A DNA stretch of 63,674 nucleotides, the filler included, from Platydemus manokwari (Eukaryota): NCBI GenBank assembly GCA_037951405.1. It is 6 parts of 6 records of this genome, joined end to end, with 100 filler letters (N's around TTAATTAATTAA, not from the genome) between each part and the next. Parts side by side here need not be neighbours in the genome. Positions count along the whole stretch, not along the records: positions 54,413 to 63,674 come from JBBMOY011275873.1; 5 more parts are not named here. One strand, given 5' to 3'. Positions 54,413 to 63,674 of the stretch are shown here, piece after piece. Position 1 is the first letter of the stretch, and each line of letters begins with the position of its first letter. The notes beneath the pieces were generated by a model. It did not search any database and was not told the DNA's origin. It worked only from the letters and a program-made list of their open reading frames with translations. The position numbers and the translations under genes were made by a program.

Positions 54413-54507
54413 TTAAAAATATATATAACACATGTATATAAAACATCTTCATTTGGTAAAAAAGCAATTGGACAAAATGATGTAGAAAACCGGAAAGAAC
54501 TTTTGGT

Positions 54508-55160
54508 TCACCCTAATATTTGATAAACTATCATTGGTTCTCCCGTGTCACAACTGATTTCATACGCTGTGCAAATTGGATGCGTCATCATTTTCCTGGT
54601 AGGTAAGTCGAACGCTACTTGAAATTTTCTAAGTTGAACTTGATTCTCGCGTTCTACTATTGCATTTTTTATTGTTCGACCCCATATACTGTATAGTCTT
54701 CCGGCACAGTATCCTGATGTTTGTTTCCATCTGACTATATTTCTTTGTTGTCGTATTATCGCTCCTGGTTTTACAATTAATTCTATGCCGTGAATTTTAA
54801 AAATTTTTGTTTGAAATTCATGTTCACATTCTATTGGCGTCACTATAGCTGCTATTGCACTCCATCTTGGCTACAGTTTTTTCGTATATCCTCCATTTTT
54901 TGAACAATAGAATACAAACTCTTGGTATGTAACTATGCACTCTTTTGTCTTTGTTTTTATGAAGTCTCCTTCTTGATATGCATGCAATAATTTCTTCCCT
55001 TCCTGTACCAGGAACACAGGATTTGACTCCGAGCAATCCTCAACATCTAACATAGTTCTGCCCCATTTTTGGCTTTGCGCAGTCAAAGGCTACTAAAGTG
55101 TTGGCCTCTCCATTTATTTCGAAAATGGTCATTTTGACAAGTATCACCTGCATAATGATC
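54508..55160 (-). pseudogene. N-terminal ~215 aa of a chuvirus-like (class III fusion) glycoprotein, env-like; one frameshift (~55062) and one in-frame stop (54871-54873)
   Basis: Reconstruction: IIMQVILVKMTIFEINGEA-NTLVAFDCAKPKMGRTMLDVEDC...ECIVTYQEFVFYCSK...VTPIECEHEFQTKIF...SGYCAGRLYSIWGRTIKNAIVERENQVQL...HPICTAYEISCDTGEPMIVY. Cys order and flanking residues follow the chuvirus glycoprotein pattern (AYDC...LDVxxC; CxxxxxxxxxxCG; GxCxGxxY..G...VxV; CxY...CxD). Confidence 0.7.
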
Positions 55161-56060
55161 GGATTGTCTTTGGCCAATTTTTTAGCTTTCTTTATGGCCT
55201 CTTTTTGTTTGGTTTCTTTCATGATTGGACTGCTCGAGTCGGTTGATGACTCGTCACTTTTTTCTAAAAGAATCTTTTTTAGCGGTGGCTTGCCTTTTAT
55301 TTTTTTGGTTTTTCCATTTAAATTTCCTGGTCGCTATGACTTTCGGCAAAAATCTTTTTTCGTGGTTGTTTGTACGGCACTTTAAATCCTGACTCGTTCC
55401 CCCCAATTAGTGTTCGATTTTCTTATATATCTTTATTATTTGATTATCTCTATCTGTTTGGGCCTTCTCCATTCTTCTTGTTTTTTCGTAATTTTCTCTT
55501 CAAAATTTTTGAATCTTTCATTCCACATGGCCTCATCGTGACCACACTGTGATGGGATATAAGATAGAGATGGCCTGATCTTTGAATCATCATTCATATG
55601 GCTTGTTCCTGCTATCGGCTAAGTGGTTATTGGCTCTGTATTGGTTGCCTCTGGTGATGGTATTTCCCAGCTATATGTGGTCTGAGCATTTGGTTGTTTG
55701 TAGTACTCAGGCATATAGATCGGCCCTTCTAGTGGCTCTCGAACCAATTATTCTCTTTCTCCAGTTGTCGTTGATTGATGAGTTGATCCTATCTTTTAAA
55801 CAGCCTAATGATTGGTTCCACCTGTCGAGCTACCATCTCTGCGGGTTGGCCAATTGTTATTATCTGCGTCACTGGGGCATGTTTGATCAGTGCCAATATG
55901 GCAATTACCTTTTCACAGATACTTTATTTCGGCTGTCCTTTTTTGTTTTCATCATGCTGGTTAATGTCTCTCCATCTTCACTAGTAACACTATAATCTTC
56001 ATCGTTGAGGTCGACTGACCATGTTTTAGTCATAGTTTGAATCTGATATTGTTAGGCAGA

Positions 56061-56606
56061 TTTTCGCCAGATCTGTATTTTATTTGGCCATGGAACAGAA
56101 AAATTATTGATCATTTGTTGTCGTCCTTCTATTTCCTTCCCTTCGTATATGACCTTTATGGTTTTTTCTTCTAATTCTTTAAATGACCATTCAACATGTA
56201 ACCATTTCAACAAACAATCTGTTACTGCTAGTGCGGGCACTTCTGCATGTCTTTCTTGTTCTTCCCCGGTTACATTATTTATTGCAATCATTTGTAACCT
56301 GATTGTCGGGAAAGCATTTTCTGTTATTGGTAATCCATCTGCTTCATCTGGTAATAATTGCACTTCGATAAAATTATCGTGTATTTGCAGCGTGTCTTTG
56401 TCGATCAAATAGTCATAATCCAGTATTTTTCTGCCCTCGTAGGTCATATTAAATGTAGTGCAAATCATTCTCTTTTTCATTAAGGCTTCATAAAACCATT
56501 TCCGCAGTTTTCTTCTAGTAGCACAAGGGTGAAAGTTATGACAACCATTTATTATGTGTTTATTATCCCATTCATAATAATACAAAGCGGTGATCGATAT
56601 TGTTTT
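56061..56606 (-). CDS. Two tandem ubiquitin-like (beta-grasp) domains within the retroelement polyprotein (ORF 56052-56705)
   Basis: Domain 1 FHPCATRRKLRKWF...MTYEGRKILDYDYLID aligns with ubiquitin VEPSDTIENVKAKI...LIFAGKQLEDGRTLSD. Domain 2 reads AEVPALAVTDCLLKWL...IKVIYEGKEIEG. Neither has a C-terminal GG. Confidence 0.6.
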
Positions 56607-57128
56607 ATAGCATTCTTTATGTTGTCTAATAAATTTTCCCATTATTTCATTTACGTCGTGGTACTTATCACTCTGCTCTCCGTATAAATATATGTTATCT
56701 TTCACAACGTTGATGTGGTAAAATATCTCTTATTTCTGCCTCCTTTAGGTCTTGTGTTAATGCATCTGATATAAGATATATAGTTTCATCGATATGAATT
56801 AACATGTCCTTGCCCCTTCTTTATGCTTTGTTTTTGTTTGTCCAATTCTTTGTCAACGAATTCAAATATATCGCTTATCTCTGCTATTGTAAGCTGTATA
56901 GGCTCCTTTTTGTCTTGTGGTATCTGACTCGGTTTCCATTTTAACTTTTCTATTAATAATTCTTGCGTATTTCTATCATCTGTTTTGCAGCATTTATCTC
57001 TTCTTCTGCGGGATGTATTACCTGATCTGCCATCGTTTTAAGATCCATATTTTTTGGTACATGTTTTATCTCTTCTGCTGGAAGTTCTTGCTGTGTCTCT
57101 ATTTTATTTTGATCATTATCCTACTGGT

Positions 57129-58071
57129 TTACGGTTTGCACAAATTTGCGCTCCCCAATGTGGCGTTTTTTATTCTGGCATCATCTAATTCCATTCTCAA
57201 CGTCGCTAACTCCTCATTTTTGGTTACAGATTCTATTCGTTTTGTTTCAGCCTGTTTGATTTTCGTCTCATTTGGTTCATCTTTATACCATTTGGGACAC
57301 GACCTTGCTCGTGGCTCGTATTCACTACAATAATAACATTGGATATGCCCTTCCTGGTTCAACTTGTCTCTCGTGAACCCTGGACTATTAGCTCTATTTC
57401 TAGGATTATACCGTCCAACTTCTCCTGTAAAGGCTTCTCTTTTCCAATTTGCCCCATTATAATTCTTATATGTACCATTATTCATTTCACTTCTTTGCAT
57501 CACTATCATTATTATTACGGTTACAGTCATTTCTCGCCCTTCTCGTCTGGGAATTATCTCTACTGTTCCACTGATAATTGTTTCTCGGTTTTATATTATC
57601 ATTATTGTTCCAATTATGATTGTTTCCTCGTTTTCAATCGCCATTATTTCTCCTAGTTTCCAATTCCCATTATTATTAGACATATTTCTGGCATTTTGTT
57701 CCTTCTGGAATCGCTCTAATAAACTTTTAAAATCTTGTCACTTGAAATCTTGCCTTGAAATCTATTTCTAAATGCCTCGGTATACCTTGCCTGTAAATCT
57801 TCTTCCATAACTATTTCTCGTTTCATCGCCTCTTTAACTCCATTATACGGTAAAGATTGTAACTGGTGGCCTCTTAATAAATTTTTATAAACATCGAATG
57901 CGTATCCTTTTAAATGAAAAGGTAATCTCGCCAGTCTCTGCACGTCATTCCATCCTTAGACTTCTGAAGTTGCTTCATATCCATAAAAAAGTCATTAAAT
58001 TCATCTGCTTTTCCGGAATATATTTCTATAGTTGGTAGTTTAACAACGTTATTTAACCTATTATCTTCCAT
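57129..58071 (-). pseudogene. gag: Retroelement gag: capsid N-terminal part, Asn/Arg-rich spacer and degenerate CCHC zinc knuckle
   Basis: Across frameshifts: MEDN...KLPTIEIYSGKADEFNDFF...GWNDVQRLARLPFHLKGYAFDVY...FRNRFQ, then an N-rich tract, then CYYCSEYEPRARSC (57338-57297; CX2CX4[H>P]X4C). The C-terminal half of the capsid appears deleted near 57720. Confidence 0.82.
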
Positions 58072-58245
58072 ATTATTTCCAGCGTAAATGTTTCTATTTC
58101 TTAACCTATAAATTATTCGATTTTCCAACGCGATTGATTTTAATTAATTAACAACGACTTTTCACAACAATCAATACTTTTATATCACAAACGAATTCGA
58201 ATTTGACGAATTGCACACAGAAATTAATTATATTATTTGACGGTT

Positions 58246-58265
58246 GAGTCCTCACTCGGGCACCA
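58246..58265 (-). promoter_or_regulatory. Primer binding site TGGTGCCCGAGTGAGGACTC
   Basis: Begins TGG (complement of tRNA CCA) 8 nt inside the LTR end. The complement GAGTCCTCACTCGGGCACCA parses as T-loop end, T-stem, acceptor strand, discriminator A and CCA. Confidence 0.8.
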
Positions 58266-58273
58266 AATTTATA

Positions 58274-59239
58274 TGTTGGGTTTTGGTACTTATATGTTTG
58301 TATTCCCAAAACCGGTGAGTTCTTAAGATTGATCTGATTTGAATTCAAATCAACCCTCTCGATTATCAGTATGTTATACTATAAACAATAATACCTAATA
58401 ATACAAATAGTAAATTGGACTATTAATCAATAAATCAAAATGAAGACGGTTTAATAAGAAAATTCCACTATTTAAATCAATATTACAAGATGTTCAAAAT
58501 AATTTACAATTGACAATAATTGATAGATCGGACAAACAAGCAAAATTATTTAATTTACACCAAACTGGATTTTGACTCAAACAAGTTAAGGTTTGGGAGT
58601 GGCCGATTCGAATTTAACGAAACGACCTATATATTAAGATTTTAGACAAATATAGATTTTAAAATATATTATTTCAGTTTCGGCAGCCTCAGAACCTTAG
58701 AATTCACTCCTTCTTGTCGTAATATACAATATTTCCAGCACTTTTGCAAAAGACGTTTATGAGCTTTCTTCTGTTGATTAAACTTCCTTCTTGAGATTAA
58801 AACGGTCGTCGGCAGTTTGCTTCTTTTAAATTTTCAGTTGTTTCTACAAGTTTTCTTTCTGCTTTTAGATTTTCTAAATGTTTGTGTTTAGATATTTGTG
58901 AGCGAAAAATAATGATTTTAGGTGCCTATTTATAGTATTTTAGAATTGGAAAATTCGCTTTAGAATTTTAAAATATTTTTATTTTTCCCAAAAATTTAAT
59001 TCTATTATTTTATTATTTCTATTAAATAAATTCTGTTAATTATAGACTTTTAGAAATTCCAACGAATTAATTTTGGAATTTTTACACATTTCTAAAATTC
59101 TATATAAATTAAATTTAATTTTTTATTATTGTTATTTTGGGAGCGCTATTTATTATTTTTGTTGTCCGATTTATTCTTAAAGTTTATTATCGTTAAAATT
59201 TCCATTATAATAATTGTCATTAAAATATAATTTGTGACA
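58274..59239 (-). repeat. Candidate 5' LTR (~966 bp)
   Basis: Minus strand starts TGTCACAAAT (59239) and ends CCCAACA (58274), giving TGT...ACA termini. Contains a TATAAATAG TATA box (~58926-58934) and is immediately followed by the PBS. The outer boundary is inferred without a second LTR. Confidence 0.65.
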
Positions 59240-59369
59240 AATACATTATGCAAATATTTGAATACAGTATACATTTAAGTAAGGATTTGAGAATTACATA
59301 ATATAAGATACAGATTAGAGACAAAATCATGAAATAAATCAAATGTACGGATTAAATGTGAGTTTTTAT

Positions 59370-59697
59370 GAGAATTTAAGATCGTCTTGTTTGTCAAGAT
59401 CCACACTTTTTGCCCACAATCGGGAATTCTCCTCTCTCAGATCTGTTGGGATTATTGACTCCGTCTTAATTGTTTCCTAGAGTTCTCTCAGGCCAACCTT
59501 CTCGGGCTTATTCCAACGATAAACCATTCAATCCCAGTTGCCATCTTGATTGAGCTCAATCCTTTCATTGGCATTTGTGGCTGTTATATTAGATGTGCTT
59601 GGAGCATTGGATGGTATATGATAGGTTGTGCTTGGGGCGTTAGAGGGCATAAGATAAGATGTGCTTGGGACGTTAGAGGCGCTTTCCCAACAATGCC
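59370..59697 (-). pseudogene. Decayed coding fragment with a 33-bp tandem repeat (PSNAPSTxYxx x3)
   Basis: GC-richer island preceded by TTCAG on the minus strand. Reads HCWESASNVPSTSYLMPSNAPSTTYHIPSNAPSTS...NWD*MVYRWNKPEKVGLREL*ETIK with two in-frame stops. Confidence 0.4.
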
Positions 59698-60360
59698 CTG
59701 AATTTATATGTAACTATTGTACATACTATAAATGCAACTGCTGCCTTATCTAAGCACGTATGAATCACTCTATGATTATTATTTGATAAGATGCGTATTA
59801 TTGTGGCAAAGAAATTTTATTACACAATTGTTCTAAAGTTGGAAACTTTTGGAATACCCGATGAAAAATTTATTAACATTTCGGCAGAACATTTTTAAGT
59901 TCTCTTTCTAAATCTTGCAAATTAGGGACGCTATTTTTTCTAAAAGCTTGAACAATTATTTGAAATGGTGAGAATTTTATCTTGAAAATTTATATAGAAT
60001 TGACCTTTTTTATTTTGTCAATATCGGTTGTTTTTTAACAAAGATTACTCGAAGAATAACTAACGTTATGCGATCGAACACTAAGTGATATGATAAATAC
60101 ATCATAGTTTGTTAAATACAAAATTACATCATTTCGAAACCATAGTTTGCAAATCTCATATTCAAATATAAATCACAAATATAAAATAATAAGTTGTATA
60201 ACAATTATTATTTATTAGAAATTAATAAAACATGATTTAACTGCATAGTACAAATAATTTTCTGTATTAAAATCAAGTTAAAACCTTGGTATAAATAGAT
60301 TTAATCGAACAAAAATATTCAATGTTTCGGAAATTAACATCTCCATCATTTTATAGTAAA

Positions 60361-61982
60361 ATGTCAAATCATTTAGAAAATCGATCCCGTTTTGTTTATA
60401 TAATAATTTAATAAAATTTTTAAATGGGTTTTCTAAAAAAAGTTTTCGTTTTCAGTGCTCTAGTTTTAGTTGGATCGATATTTGCTTATCAGTTTTTAAA
60501 TGAACATCAGATTTCTTCAATATCGATGACAACTTTATTTACAATTACGAAAATAGTAAAATAAATTTCTTCCTCTTCATTTTAATTCATTTTTGAGGAT
60601 TTATATTTGAAATCTTACTTTGGCATCAATGGATTCTACCGTGGTTATGAGAAATTTATATCAAACATGATATATAGCAAGGTCAATAGTTCTGGATTAA
60701 AGGTAAAGTGAATAATAAAAATATAAATTTATTATGAGAATGATATGCAGATTGATATACAACACTTCGATGAAGTGGAGGTTTTAATTTTCAGTCCTCT
60801 CAAGTATAAATCAAAACGACCCGCTATCATTCATTTGCATGGAAGCGGCTGGATCTATTTTAGTCCAAGTTTTTTATTTGATTTTTAATAAAATTTGTAA
60901 TAAGAATATTTCTCCGATTGTTAAGAGGTTTATTCACCGTACTTAGCCGATCTATCTCGTCGATTAAACATATTAATTGTATCCATAAAGTGAGAAAAAA
61001 CCAAATCACTGGTTTTTAGATATATTTCTTCATTACAGTTATCGAAAAGCTCCTGAACATCCATTTCCCGCTGGTGTCACAGATGCCATTGTTGCCACTA
61101 AATATTTCATGGAAAATGCTGAAAAATATGATGTGGATCCGAATCGAGTAGCTTTGATGGGTGGATTAAAATGATTTATGAAAATTTTGGTTTATCAATT
61201 TTTGTTATTTGTAGGAGAAAGTGCTGGTGGTAATTTAGTTGTTTGTGTTGGACATCATTTGGCTTCCATGTTGAAGCTTGGTAAAATTATGAGAGCACCT
61301 AAACTTCTAATTCCAATTGTACCAGCATTTCAAATGGTAGATATGAACACACCATCATTGGTTGATGACAGTCGTGATGAAATATTGAAAAAGTCAGAAT
61401 CTTGCTATTATTTCATGATTGATATAATAAACATTTCAGAGAATGGTGTATGAGTATGGTTTGTAATTATGTGTTTGGAGAATTATCGACTACTGAGCTC
61501 CATGAGTGTATGAATGTGGTGTCAACCAACAATCATTTGAGTGAGGTGGTTGTTAAGAAAGTGAGAGACAATGTTGATTGGAAACAATATTTAAGAGGAA
61601 AGTAATAAATTGATGAATTAAATTCGATATTGAGCAATTTAATAGTGATTACGACAATGTTCCGCAGAGTACTTTCAAATTCACAACGAATAAATTTGTA
61701 AAGAGATTCTCTGAATTGGTTCAAGATCCTTTGTTTTCACCCATGTCAGCTCTGAACAACAGTGATCTTGAGATATTACCACCAGTGTATTTGATAGCGG
61801 CTTCAAAAGATCCATTGAGAGATGATGCTAAAATATTGGCAGCAAGATTGGCGAAAATGAAACGAGGAGAGCTGAAAGAATTTAATTATTCTCATGTTGG
61901 TATTTTGAAGCCTGAAAATTTCGAAGAATATTTTGACTATTTGTTTTCGGTATTGAAAAGACAAGGTTTTACCGAAATTTAA
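60361..61982 (+). CDS. Arylacetamide deacetylase / NCEH1-like esterase (hormone-sensitive lipase family alpha/beta hydrolase), multi-exon
   Basis: Spliced exons give an N-terminal hydrophobic anchor, PAIIHLHGSGW (HGGG-type oxyanion motif), NYRKAPEHPFPAG, VDPNRVALMGESAGGNL (catalytic Ser), SPM, DPLRDD (Asp) and YSHVG (His). The first exon and start codon are tentative. Confidence 0.9.
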
Positions 61983-63674
61983 GTTTAATTTTATTACATC
62001 TTTTATTAATTGATTTTCTTATCGCTGCAACATAAATGTTTTTATAATTTTTATTTATGAAATATCAATTTGTTAGAAATATCAAATTGATTACTCTGAT
62101 TTTGTTCTGAATAAACATTTAACTAGACTCATTTTTCTGATTAATTTTCATTGATCATTCATGATGCACGAATATGTTCCAGATTGATTTGAGTTCGTTT
62201 GCGCTAGCAGTCTAAAACTGATGTTAAATAATTATTATACATATTTGAAACGGCAATAGCAATAATTTGGATTTTGGAATAAGTTTGATAAGACTCATAC
62301 TTTCAAATAAAACCATATTCAACCAGTTTCATAGCTCTTTTGAATTAATTATTTGAAATAAATTATTGATTGTATTCAGTTTAAGAAAAATATTATGTTT
62401 CTTATTCGTCCAACGATTGAAGCCTTGTTGTCATTTCATATACCAAAGATACTCCATATACTTCTTGATCACCGATTATTTTCAATAAGTCAAACATGAT
62501 CAAAGTTCAGTAAATTTAGACATACACCATGTTAGTAAGCTTTATTTACTGAAATATTGATATTGATTATAATTTTATTACTAACGTTGATTGTTGATTT
62601 ATTTAAACATTAAAAAATATTTTATTTACAATAATTTTTATAACAAGAAATTTTTAAATTAACTTTTACTGATTTGAATTTTGTTCTCTACCAAAATCTA
62701 AAAATTTTCCATTACTTTTAAATATAGCTTTGAGATTTAACCATGTATAATTTAAAATGTTCTTGTAATAATAGTATTCAGAATATTGTAACTTTAAATT
62801 TGTAATAAATTTTGATATGCAGAAAATAATCAAAGATTTAAAAAATAAGCCTAAAGGTTGTGAAATCATCTTTAAAATAAATAAAATAACACGCTAAAAT
62901 AAATTTCAGTCAAAATATTTTATGAATACATGAAAGTTCATAAATACAGGTGATTTCACTTAATGATAATGAATATTAAAGGTGCATAACATTGGTCAAA
63001 GTTGATCAAAATTATTTAATGTGTGTTGTTTATTATTATCGATTGTGATTATGTTAATTTTAATTGTGTTTTAATAATACAATCGTAAATTCTCCTATGT
63101 GTCATTCTCATGCCGCTCACTTGTGAAGTTAGTTTAACGTCATTCGTAATAGTCTTACTATCCTACATTGGATTCTTAATTGTCTTAATTTATTTTCAAC
63201 ATCCTCAGGTACTACTGGGAATTCAATAAAAACAAAAAATATAGTTAAATATAATAACAATTTTTAGTTTTAACATGGCAATGAATGGTTACTATATAAA
63301 CAAAAATAGGAATTTGAAAACATCGTTACTTTGAAAAGTAAATTAAATAAGAAGGCTTATGAAAAATATATTCTAAAGTTTTATTTAACCAAGCTATCGG
63401 TGAAATTTCTAAACAAATTTTAGAACCTATTATTCAAATTTTATTATTATTCCAAAAGTCTATAATTGGTACGTAGTTTTATTAAAATATAGACCGAAAT
63501 AAATAGTAGTAGGATTCAAAGATGCTGATATGGGTTTTACAAAAAATAACTCAAAATTTATTCAGATAATTGACAATAATAAAATTAAATAATCGAGAGT
63601 AAAATTAAATAACTCCAATCATTCACTGAATAAAATGTTTTTTGATATACCAAACAATAACCCAGTAGAACCTT

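What the first reader, a model, noticed from the sequence alone, without database searches (positions are those of the whole stretch)
54508..59239. LTR element with the architecture gag - 2x ubiquitin-like - chuvirus-type fusogen and no pol in between
Seen in sequence: LTR, TATA box, PBS, gag capsid motif and Zn knuckle, then ~2.7 kb that stays coding-like on the same strand and can be stitched across stops and frameshifts into one apparent polyprotein from 58071 to 54508. Between the knuckle (57297) and the glycoprotein (55160) I find no D(T/S)G protease, YxDD reverse transcriptase, RNase H or HHCC/DDE integrase motif. Established: enveloped LTR elements normally read gag-pol-env. Inference: this is either a gag-env element mobilised in trans, an element with pol downstream of env, or an internal-deletion derivative. 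The first two would be an unusual, possibly undescribed family of enveloped retroelements or virus-like particle producers in this host.
Basis: partly seen in the sequence, partly recalled or inferred. Interest (0 to 1): 0.9.

Follow-up and report, generated by a model that had tools for sequence, protein, structure and literature searches.

The report
Decayed retrovirus-like fragment: gag, orphan ORF, glycoprotein
This is the broken front half of a retrovirus-like mobile element in an AT-rich invertebrate genome, cut off by the end of the available sequence inside its envelope gene. The missing polymerase probably lies further on, as in gag-env-pol elements already described in nematodes, flatworms and bryozoans, so the finding is mostly ordinary.

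Summary
On the minus strand, three blocks are far less interrupted than shuffled sequence. They are a gag-like block (58071-57129), an unbroken 217-codon ORF (56705-52) and the first ~30% of a Monjiviricetes/chuvirus-type class III glycoprotein (55222-54413). The glycoprotein call rests on two colinear sub-threshold Pfam PF24664 hits.

Four things do not hold up:
- The piece ends inside env, so "no pol" cannot be said of the element.
- The two stretches between the blocks are about as broken as random sequence, so "one polyprotein" is unsupported.
- "2x ubiquitin-like" has no support. There is no Pfam, PDB or fold match and no homologue among 1.84 billion proteins, only a weak internal repeat.
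- The LTR and PBS are unverified. There is no second LTR in the piece and no tRNA partner was found.

A gag-env-pol order with gB/chuvirus-like Env is already published for Ty3/gypsy-type elements of Nematoda, Platyhelminthes and Bryozoa. The host flank (compact, AT-rich, ~50-nt introns) fits such hosts.

Best reading (about 0.5): a dead 5' portion of such an element. The orphan ORF is the only real curiosity. Interest is low to moderate.

The parts
58274..59239 (-).
   Evidence: It lies directly upstream of the PBS-like site and gag. There is no second copy in the piece. GC is 25%. It has 1 TATAAA and 6 AATAAA, which is no more than the neighbouring AT-rich flanks carry. The 5' boundary is not established.
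58246..58265 (-). PBS-like 20-mer (TGG followed by 17 GC-rich bases), 8 nt after the proposed LTR end
   Evidence: It is one of only two GC-rich islands in about 4 kb of AT-rich flank (11 of 3983 windows). No tRNA partner was found. The nearest ends in the published PBS table are Lys(UUU)-type, at 2 mismatches of 12, which is not significant.
57129..58071 (-). gag-like gene, broken (at least 1 in-frame stop and 2 frameshifts). It contains a 42-nt tandem repeat and a knuckle-like Cys spacing.
   Evidence: Minimum of 3 breaks against 13.4 +/- 2.1 in shuffles, 0 of 500. C-x2-C-x9-C occurs once, where about 0 is expected. Tandem repeat. No Pfam or PDB hit. The gag call rests on position and on motifs read by eye.
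56706..57128 (-). Stretch A between gag and ORF217, with doubtful coding status
   Evidence: Minimum of 3 breaks in 426 nt against 5.5 +/- 1.3 in shuffles (30 of 500 as good). No Pfam hit.
56052..56705 (-). ORF217: an unbroken orphan ORF (the open run is 225 codons).
   Evidence: Significance of the open run. There is no homologue or family anywhere. Weak internal repeat: BLASTP E 0.006; Smith-Waterman score 40 against 24 +/- 4 in shuffles. No transmembrane segment. AlphaFold2 models are of low confidence and Foldseek finds nothing.
55223..56051 (-). Stretch B between ORF217 and env, with doubtful coding status
   Evidence: Minimum of 7 breaks in 884 nt against 10.0 +/- 1.8 in shuffles (39 of 500 as good). 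No Pfam hit.
54413..55222 (-). N-terminal ~30% of a Monjiviricetes/chuvirus-type class III fusion glycoprotein gene. It is broken (at least 2 stops and 1 frameshift) and cut by the piece's edge.
   Evidence: Two colinear PF24664 hits at profile 39-87 and 106-194 of 653. Minimum of 3 breaks against 10.0 +/- 1.7 in shuffles, 0 of 500. No PDB sequence match. No homologue of similar length.
60424..61982 (+). Neighbouring host gene: Abhydrolase_3 (arylacetamide deacetylase / hormone-sensitive-lipase-like), with several short introns. It is divergent from the element, about 1.2 kb from the element's 5' end.
   Evidence: Pfam PF07859 on two exons. Sequence read. The last exon is 58% identical to two proteins on unnamed metagenome contigs.

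Best explanation
The piece holds the dead 5' portion of an env-carrying LTR retroelement whose gene order is gag, (orphan ORF), env, pol. This is the arrangement already described for gB/chuvirus-like-Env Ty3/gypsy-type endogenous retroviruses of nematodes, flatworms and bryozoans.

In an intact relative (inferred, not shown here), transcription would start in the 5' LTR and a tRNA would prime reverse transcription at the PBS. Gag would build the capsid, and the class III glycoprotein would sit in the membrane and mediate fusion for cell-to-cell passage. Protease, reverse transcriptase and integrase would be encoded downstream of env. Here that is beyond base 54413, outside the piece.

This copy cannot work, because gag and env are both interrupted. 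ORF217 is most likely a lineage-specific accessory or linker gene of the element. Its fold and role are unknown.
For: - Three blocks on one strand are strongly break-depleted, in the order gag-like, ORF217, G-like.
- The same A-rich, T-poor strand bias runs through all of them.
- No boundaries of a nested insertion were found.
- The G-like block gives two colinear PF24664 hits that cover only the first 30% of the profile, so the gene runs on past the edge.
- No pol remnant lies between gag and env. A simple pol deletion therefore does not explain the 2 kb found there.
- The literature describes the GAG-ENV-POL order with gB-type Env in Nematoda, Platyhelminthes and Bryozoa, and states that the chuvirus-like glycoprotein is structurally gB-like (PMC13524379).
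- The listed nematode elements span 8.6-12.9 kb from LTR to LTR. That leaves room for about 3 kb between the LTR and env, as seen here.
- The host flank is compact and AT-rich with introns of about 47-60 nt, which is compatible with such hosts.
Against: - No pol and no second LTR can be seen, because the piece ends inside env.
- gag has no profile or structure-database hit.
- The PBS has no identified tRNA partner.
- The host phylum is not established.
- The env match is below Pfam's gathering score.
- An ORF between gag and env is not mentioned in the text I could read, and Sacco et al. 2022 could not be read.
- The proposed 966-nt LTR is longer than the 140-470 nt listed for nematode elements.
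Confidence: 0.5

Rival explanations
1. The element is a derivative of a canonical gag-pol-env element that lost pol by internal deletion or rearrangement. Alternatively, it belongs to a pol-less gag-env family copied by the enzymes of a relative.
For: gag-pol-env is the usual order, including for chuvirus-like glycoproteins in mosquito Pao elements (PMC7642597) and in gypsy elements of several arthropod orders. The copy is clearly decayed. No pol is found between gag and env.
Against: A deletion should bring gag and env together. Instead they are separated by about 2 kb that has no pol similarity and contains an intact, unrelated ORF. No pol-less gag-env family turned up in the papers I read. 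Absence of pol from the whole element cannot be asserted, because the piece ends inside env.
Confidence: 0.2
2. This is a mosaic, not one element. A remnant of some LTR element (LTR-like stretch plus gag), an unrelated orphan ORF and a separately endogenised Jingchuvirales-type glycoprotein fragment happen to lie side by side.
For: The two stretches between the blocks look non-coding. Jingchuvirales glycoprotein insertions are often flanked by fragmentary LTR retrotransposons (PMC10084718). The LTR, PBS and gag are not verified by homology.
Against: All three blocks are on the same strand with the same strong A-over-T bias. gag and env have similar break densities. No repeat pairs or boundaries of nested insertions were found.
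Confidence: 0.18
3. It is not a retroelement at all. It is a multi-gene endogenous copy of a negative-strand RNA virus (for example nucleoprotein, small protein, glycoprotein), and the 'LTR' and 'PBS' are chance features of AT-rich host DNA.
For: The only family-level homology in the whole element is to an RNA-virus glycoprotein family. The LTR signals are at background level.
Against: The first block has a Cys spacing typical of a retroelement nucleocapsid knuckle, and read by eye it has a gag-like layout. No nucleoprotein or matrix family hit was found. The GC-rich site starting with TGG sits exactly where a PBS is expected.
Confidence: 0.06

Closest known systems
GAG-ENV-POL env-carrying Ty3/gypsy-type endogenous retroviruses of Nematoda, Platyhelminthes and Bryozoa (Chary & Hayashi, eLife 2026, PMC13524379; nematode ERVs of Sacco et al. 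2022, J Gen Virol 103:001739)
   Same: env follows gag with no pol in between. Env is a class III (gB/chuvirus-like) fusogen. The elements are long, 8.6-12.9 kb in nematodes. The hosts have compact, AT-rich genomes.
   Different: pol, the second LTR and the host phylum could not be seen here. About 2 kb, including an orphan ORF, separates gag from env, and the text I could read does not describe that. The proposed LTR (966 nt) is longer than those listed. The PBS type is not among those tabulated at 0-1 mismatch.
Anakin: mosquito BEL/Pao elements carrying a chuvirus-derived glycoprotein (Dezordi et al. 2020, PMC7642597)
   Same: An LTR element associated with a Jingchuvirales-type glycoprotein. 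Many copies are defective.
   Different: Anakin reads GAG-PR-RT-RH-INT-Gly. Here no pol domain lies between gag and the glycoprotein.
Solo Jingchuvirales glycoprotein EVEs flanked by LTR-retrotransposon fragments (PMC10084718)
   Same: A fragmentary glycoprotein next to LTR-element debris.
   Different: Here gag, ORF217 and env share strand, composition and degree of decay. That favours one unit.
Nematode belpaoviruses with captured fusogens (Cer, Tas, Atlas; PMC9094657)
   Same: A nematode retroelement with an envelope gene taken from an unrelated virus and a highly divergent Gag.
   Different: Those elements are Gag-Pol-Env, with a class II phlebovirus-like Gc in Atlas. Here the match is to a class III Monjiviricetes family, and env follows gag.

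Membership tests
GAG-ENV-POL env-carrying Ty3/gypsy-type ERVs (nematode/flatworm/bryozoan) | Two LTRs flanking the element | tested here: inconclusive
   There is no direct repeat in the piece. The piece ends inside env, so a 3' LTR could not be present anyway.
GAG-ENV-POL env-carrying Ty3/gypsy-type ERVs (nematode/flatworm/bryozoan) | tRNA primer-binding site next to the 5' LTR | tested here: inconclusive
   A GC island starting with TGG sits at 58246-58265. No tRNA gene matches it. The nearest tabulated tRNA ends differ at 2 of 12 positions, and about 1 in 4 random TGG-anchored sites would do as well (my estimate).
GAG-ENV-POL env-carrying Ty3/gypsy-type ERVs (nematode/flatworm/bryozoan) | gag immediately downstream of the LTR/PBS | tested here: inconclusive
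   There is a break-depleted block with a knuckle-like Cys spacing, but no gag, capsid or zf-CCHC profile hit and no PDB hit.
GAG-ENV-POL env-carrying Ty3/gypsy-type ERVs (nematode/flatworm/bryozoan) | Class III (gB/chuvirus-like) env downstream of gag with no pol in between | tested here: met
   PF24664 gives two colinear hits. No pol domain or motif lies between gag and env. Caveat: each hit is below the gathering score, and 2 kb of unknown sequence intervenes.
GAG-ENV-POL env-carrying Ty3/gypsy-type ERVs (nematode/flatworm/bryozoan) | Ty3/gypsy-type PR-RT-RH-IN downstream of env | not testable with these tools
   That region lies beyond the piece's edge at 54413.
GAG-ENV-POL env-carrying Ty3/gypsy-type ERVs (nematode/flatworm/bryozoan) | Host in Nematoda, Platyhelminthes or Bryozoa | tested here: inconclusive
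   The flank is AT-rich and compact, with introns of about 47-60 nt. The only relatives of the host gene are on unnamed metagenome contigs.
Anakin (BEL/Pao + chuvirus glycoprotein) | Pao-type PR-RT-RH-INT between gag and the glycoprotein | tested here: not met
   There is no pol domain or motif between gag and env.
Pfam PF24664 Monjiviricetes fusion glycoprotein | Profile match at or above the gathering score (27 bits) | tested here: inconclusive
   The two pieces score 13.3 and 15.3 bits. They are colinear, and no other piece of the window hits this family. The gene is broken, and only about 30% of it lies inside the piece.
Ubiquitin-like (beta-grasp) domains | Match to a ubiquitin-family profile or a beta-grasp structure | tested here: not met
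   There is no ubiquitin-family Pfam hit for ORF217 or either half, even at E<=10, and no PDB sequence hit. The AlphaFold2 models have pLDDT 34.6 and 48.7. Foldseek's best results are E 0.14 and 1.3, with no consistent Ubl hits. The fold test is weak because no alignment could be built.

The most novel reading that the evidence does not exclude
There are two novel readings. The unit LTR-gag-ORF217-env could be a real, recurrent family that lacks pol altogether and is copied in trans. Or ORF217 could be a previously unseen accessory gene (a tandem pair of small alpha/beta modules) carried between gag and env by a lineage of env-bearing retroelements.
Probability: 0.12. Interest if true: 0.6.

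Novelty: new member of a known kind. Interest (0 to 1): 0.3.

Why it matters
If the best reading holds, this is one more decayed copy of a class of invertebrate endogenous retroviruses that place a captured RNA-virus-type fusion glycoprotein between gag and pol. It is useful for annotation and for cataloguing such elements, but it is not a new principle. The only point that could matter more is the orphan ORF between gag and env. If it recurs in other copies, it would be an undescribed accessory gene of these elements.

Tried and rejected
SEARCHES WITH ORF217 THAT FOUND NOTHING
- Pfam.
- PDB sequences.
- Word-indexed protein search.
- Full HMMER search of 1.84 billion representatives.
- tblastn-confirmed scan of metagenome contigs.
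- Exact look-up of ten ORFs of the piece in the 15-billion-protein collection; none is present.

OTHER SEARCHES
- Env piece: no similar-length homologue and no PDB match.
- gag pieces: no Pfam or PDB hit.
- Structure: both AlphaFold2 jobs gave low-confidence models, and Foldseek gave only noise.
- PBS: ARAGORN and Rfam found nothing in the piece. The 17-mer has 18 metagenome hits, none in a tRNA.
- Host identity: two 58%-identical exon relatives, both on unnamed metagenome contigs. The accession numbers appear in no paper.
- Long plus-strand ORFs across the element: rejected as genes. They are what an A-poor strand gives by chance, and they have no Pfam hits.
- Nested-insertion boundaries: none found.
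- Sacco et al. 2022 is not in the paper library. What I say of it beyond its title and its citation in PMC13524379 is from memory.

STEPS LEFT OUT ON PURPOSE
- Any reading joined across frameshifts or stops.
- Any consensus of copies.
- Joining the host gene's exons for a search. Exons were searched singly.
- Scans of the viral-contig collection.
- Looking up this locus beyond the piece's edge.

Full report
SCOPE
I worked only on 54413-63674. The element lies on the minus strand. Its proposed 5' end is at 59239, and it runs off the piece at 54413. I made no reading across frameshifts or stops. Every protein query was a single open piece given by reference.

WHAT IS THERE

Coding blocks
- The minus strand of 54413-58100 has an open run of 225 codons, which no shuffle out of 2000 reaches.
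- I computed a minimum-break count: the fewest stops plus frame changes needed to read a stretch through.
- Three blocks come out far below their shuffles (0 of 500 each): a gag-like block (58071-57129), ORF217 (56705-56052) and a glycoprotein-like block (55222-54413).
- The two stretches between them (57128-56706 and 56051-55223) are only marginally better than shuffles: 30 and 39 of 500 shuffles do as well. Two non-coding controls give 102 and 63 of 500.
- So there are three coding blocks, not a demonstrable single polyprotein.

Lower bounds on damage
- gag: at least one in-frame stop and two frameshifts.
- The visible part of env: at least two stops and one frameshift.
- ORF217: none.
- The intactness of ORF217 is not remarkable. 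The break density of gag and env predicts about 2.5 breaks in 654 nt, so P(0) is about 0.07.

Strand bias
All blocks and both intervening stretches share a marked A-over-T bias on the minus strand: A 0.38-0.43, T 0.21-0.27. Long plus-strand ORFs over the element are what that bias gives by chance (141 of 2000 shuffles).

IDENTITY OF THE BLOCKS

Env
- Two pieces hit Pfam PF24664 (Monjiviricetes fusion glycoprotein) at profile positions 39-87 and 106-194 of 653. E-values are 0.021 and 0.0049.
- Each is below the gathering score. However, they are colinear, on one strand, and the only hits to that family among some 45 pieces scanned.
- I accept the glycoprotein call. Only about the first 30% of the gene is inside the piece.

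gag
- There is no profile or PDB hit.
- The call rests on its position after the LTR/PBS-like region and on a layout read by eye. It also has a single C-x2-C-x9-C spacing, expected about zero times by chance, which carries three of the four ligand positions of a CCHC knuckle.

Between gag and env
- No piece hits a protease, RT, RNase H or integrase family.
- The three frames contain no D[ST]G, YxDD or HHCC motif.

ORF217, THE '2X UBIQUITIN-LIKE' REGION
- No Pfam hit for the ORF or either half, even at E<=10.
- No PDB sequence hit.
- No hit in the word-indexed protein search.
- No hit at E<=0.001 among 1.84 billion representative proteins.
- No relative in metagenome contigs.
- The two halves resemble each other weakly: BLASTP gives 28% identity over 36 residues, E 0.006. 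Smith-Waterman gives a score of 40 against 24 +/- 4 in shuffles, reached by 7-20 of 3000.
- Single-sequence AlphaFold2 gave pLDDT 34.6 for the whole ORF. For the first module it gave 48.7 with pTM 0.43, and a strand-strand-helix-strand-strand-strand order that is compatible with, but no evidence for, a beta-grasp.
- Foldseek against the PDB returned nothing meaningful.
- The ubiquitin-like label is therefore unsupported. The region is an orphan.

LTR AND PBS
- The piece holds no repeat of the LTR-like stretch.
- TATA and polyadenylation strings occur there at the same rate as in neighbouring AT-rich DNA.
- The PBS-like 20-mer (58246-58265) is a genuine GC island (11 of 3983 windows as GC-rich) and starts with TGG.
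- ARAGORN and Rfam find no tRNA in the piece.
- The 17 bases after TGG occur in 18 metagenome loci, none in a tRNA gene.
- In the PBS table of bioRxiv 10.1101/2023.10.26.564294 there is no exact 11- or 12-mer match. The nearest listed tRNA ends are Lys(UUU)-type, at 2 mismatches of 12.
- By my estimate, about one random TGG-anchored site in four would match a list of that length as well.

SURROUNDINGS
- On the plus strand at 60424-61982 lies an apparently intact Abhydrolase_3 gene with several introns of about 47-60 nt. It is divergent from the element and about 1.2 kb away.
- I searched its exons singly and left out the joined model.
- Its last exon has two 58%-identical relatives on unnamed metagenome contigs, so the host is not identified.
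- The compact, very AT-rich context fits a nematode or a similar small invertebrate genome. This is an inference.

COMPARISON WITH WHAT IS KNOWN
- Mosquito Anakin elements read GAG-PR-RT-RH-INT-Gly (PMC7642597), which this copy does not.
- Jingchuvirales glycoprotein insertions often lie among LTR fragments (PMC10084718).
- Most relevant is PMC13524379. It reports that env-carrying Ty3/gypsy-type elements of Nematoda, Bryozoa and Platyhelminthes carry only gB-type Env and are arranged GAG-ENV-POL, citing Sacco et al. 2022 for nematodes. It also states that the chuvirus-like glycoprotein is structurally gB-like.
- Its Table S1 lists such elements in Meloidogyne, Heterodera, Globodera, Caenorhabditis, Schmidtea and others. 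The nematode entries span 8.6-12.9 kb from LTR to LTR and have LTRs of 140-470 nt.
- An element with about 3 kb between the LTR and env, as here, fits that size range.
- I could not read Sacco et al. 2022.

VERDICT
- The most likely reading (about 0.5) is a dead 5' portion of a gag-env-pol element, with pol beyond the edge.
- A deletion derivative or a pol-less family (0.2), a mosaic of unrelated fragments (0.18) and a multi-gene RNA-virus insertion (0.06) remain possible.
- What remains unexplained is ORF217.

SLIP

Noticed in passing
window 60424-61982 (+): An apparently intact host gene of the Abhydrolase_3 family (arylacetamide deacetylase / hormone-sensitive-lipase-like) with several introns of about 47-60 nt. 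The element's 5' end lies about 1.2 kb upstream in divergent orientation.
   Followed up: partly
window 59591-59679, within 59413-59912: A 33-nt tandem repeat (2.7 copies, 80% matches) sits inside the only GC-richer island of the otherwise 20-25% GC flank. It has no Pfam or Rfam match, and its nature is unknown.
   Followed up: partly
window 57553-57648 (-): A 42-nt tandem duplication inside the gag-like block produces a low-complexity Asn/Gly/Ile-rich stretch.
   Followed up: no
L003:71-87 and L011:5806-5822: In two GC-rich metagenome contigs, the 17-mer of the PBS-like site is followed by a T-arm-like continuation. Neither ARAGORN nor Rfam calls a tRNA there.
   Followed up: partly
L019:1170-1556; P0001, P0002: The only relatives of the host gene's last exon (58% identity) come from metagenome assemblies (ERZ27257134, ERZ27256860, SRR8558719). 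This suggests that a relative of the host occurs in environmental samples.
   Followed up: partly
window 55261-55372 (+ coordinates): A 32-nt direct repeat with 80-nt spacing (75% identity) lies just upstream of the glycoprotein-like block.
   Followed up: no
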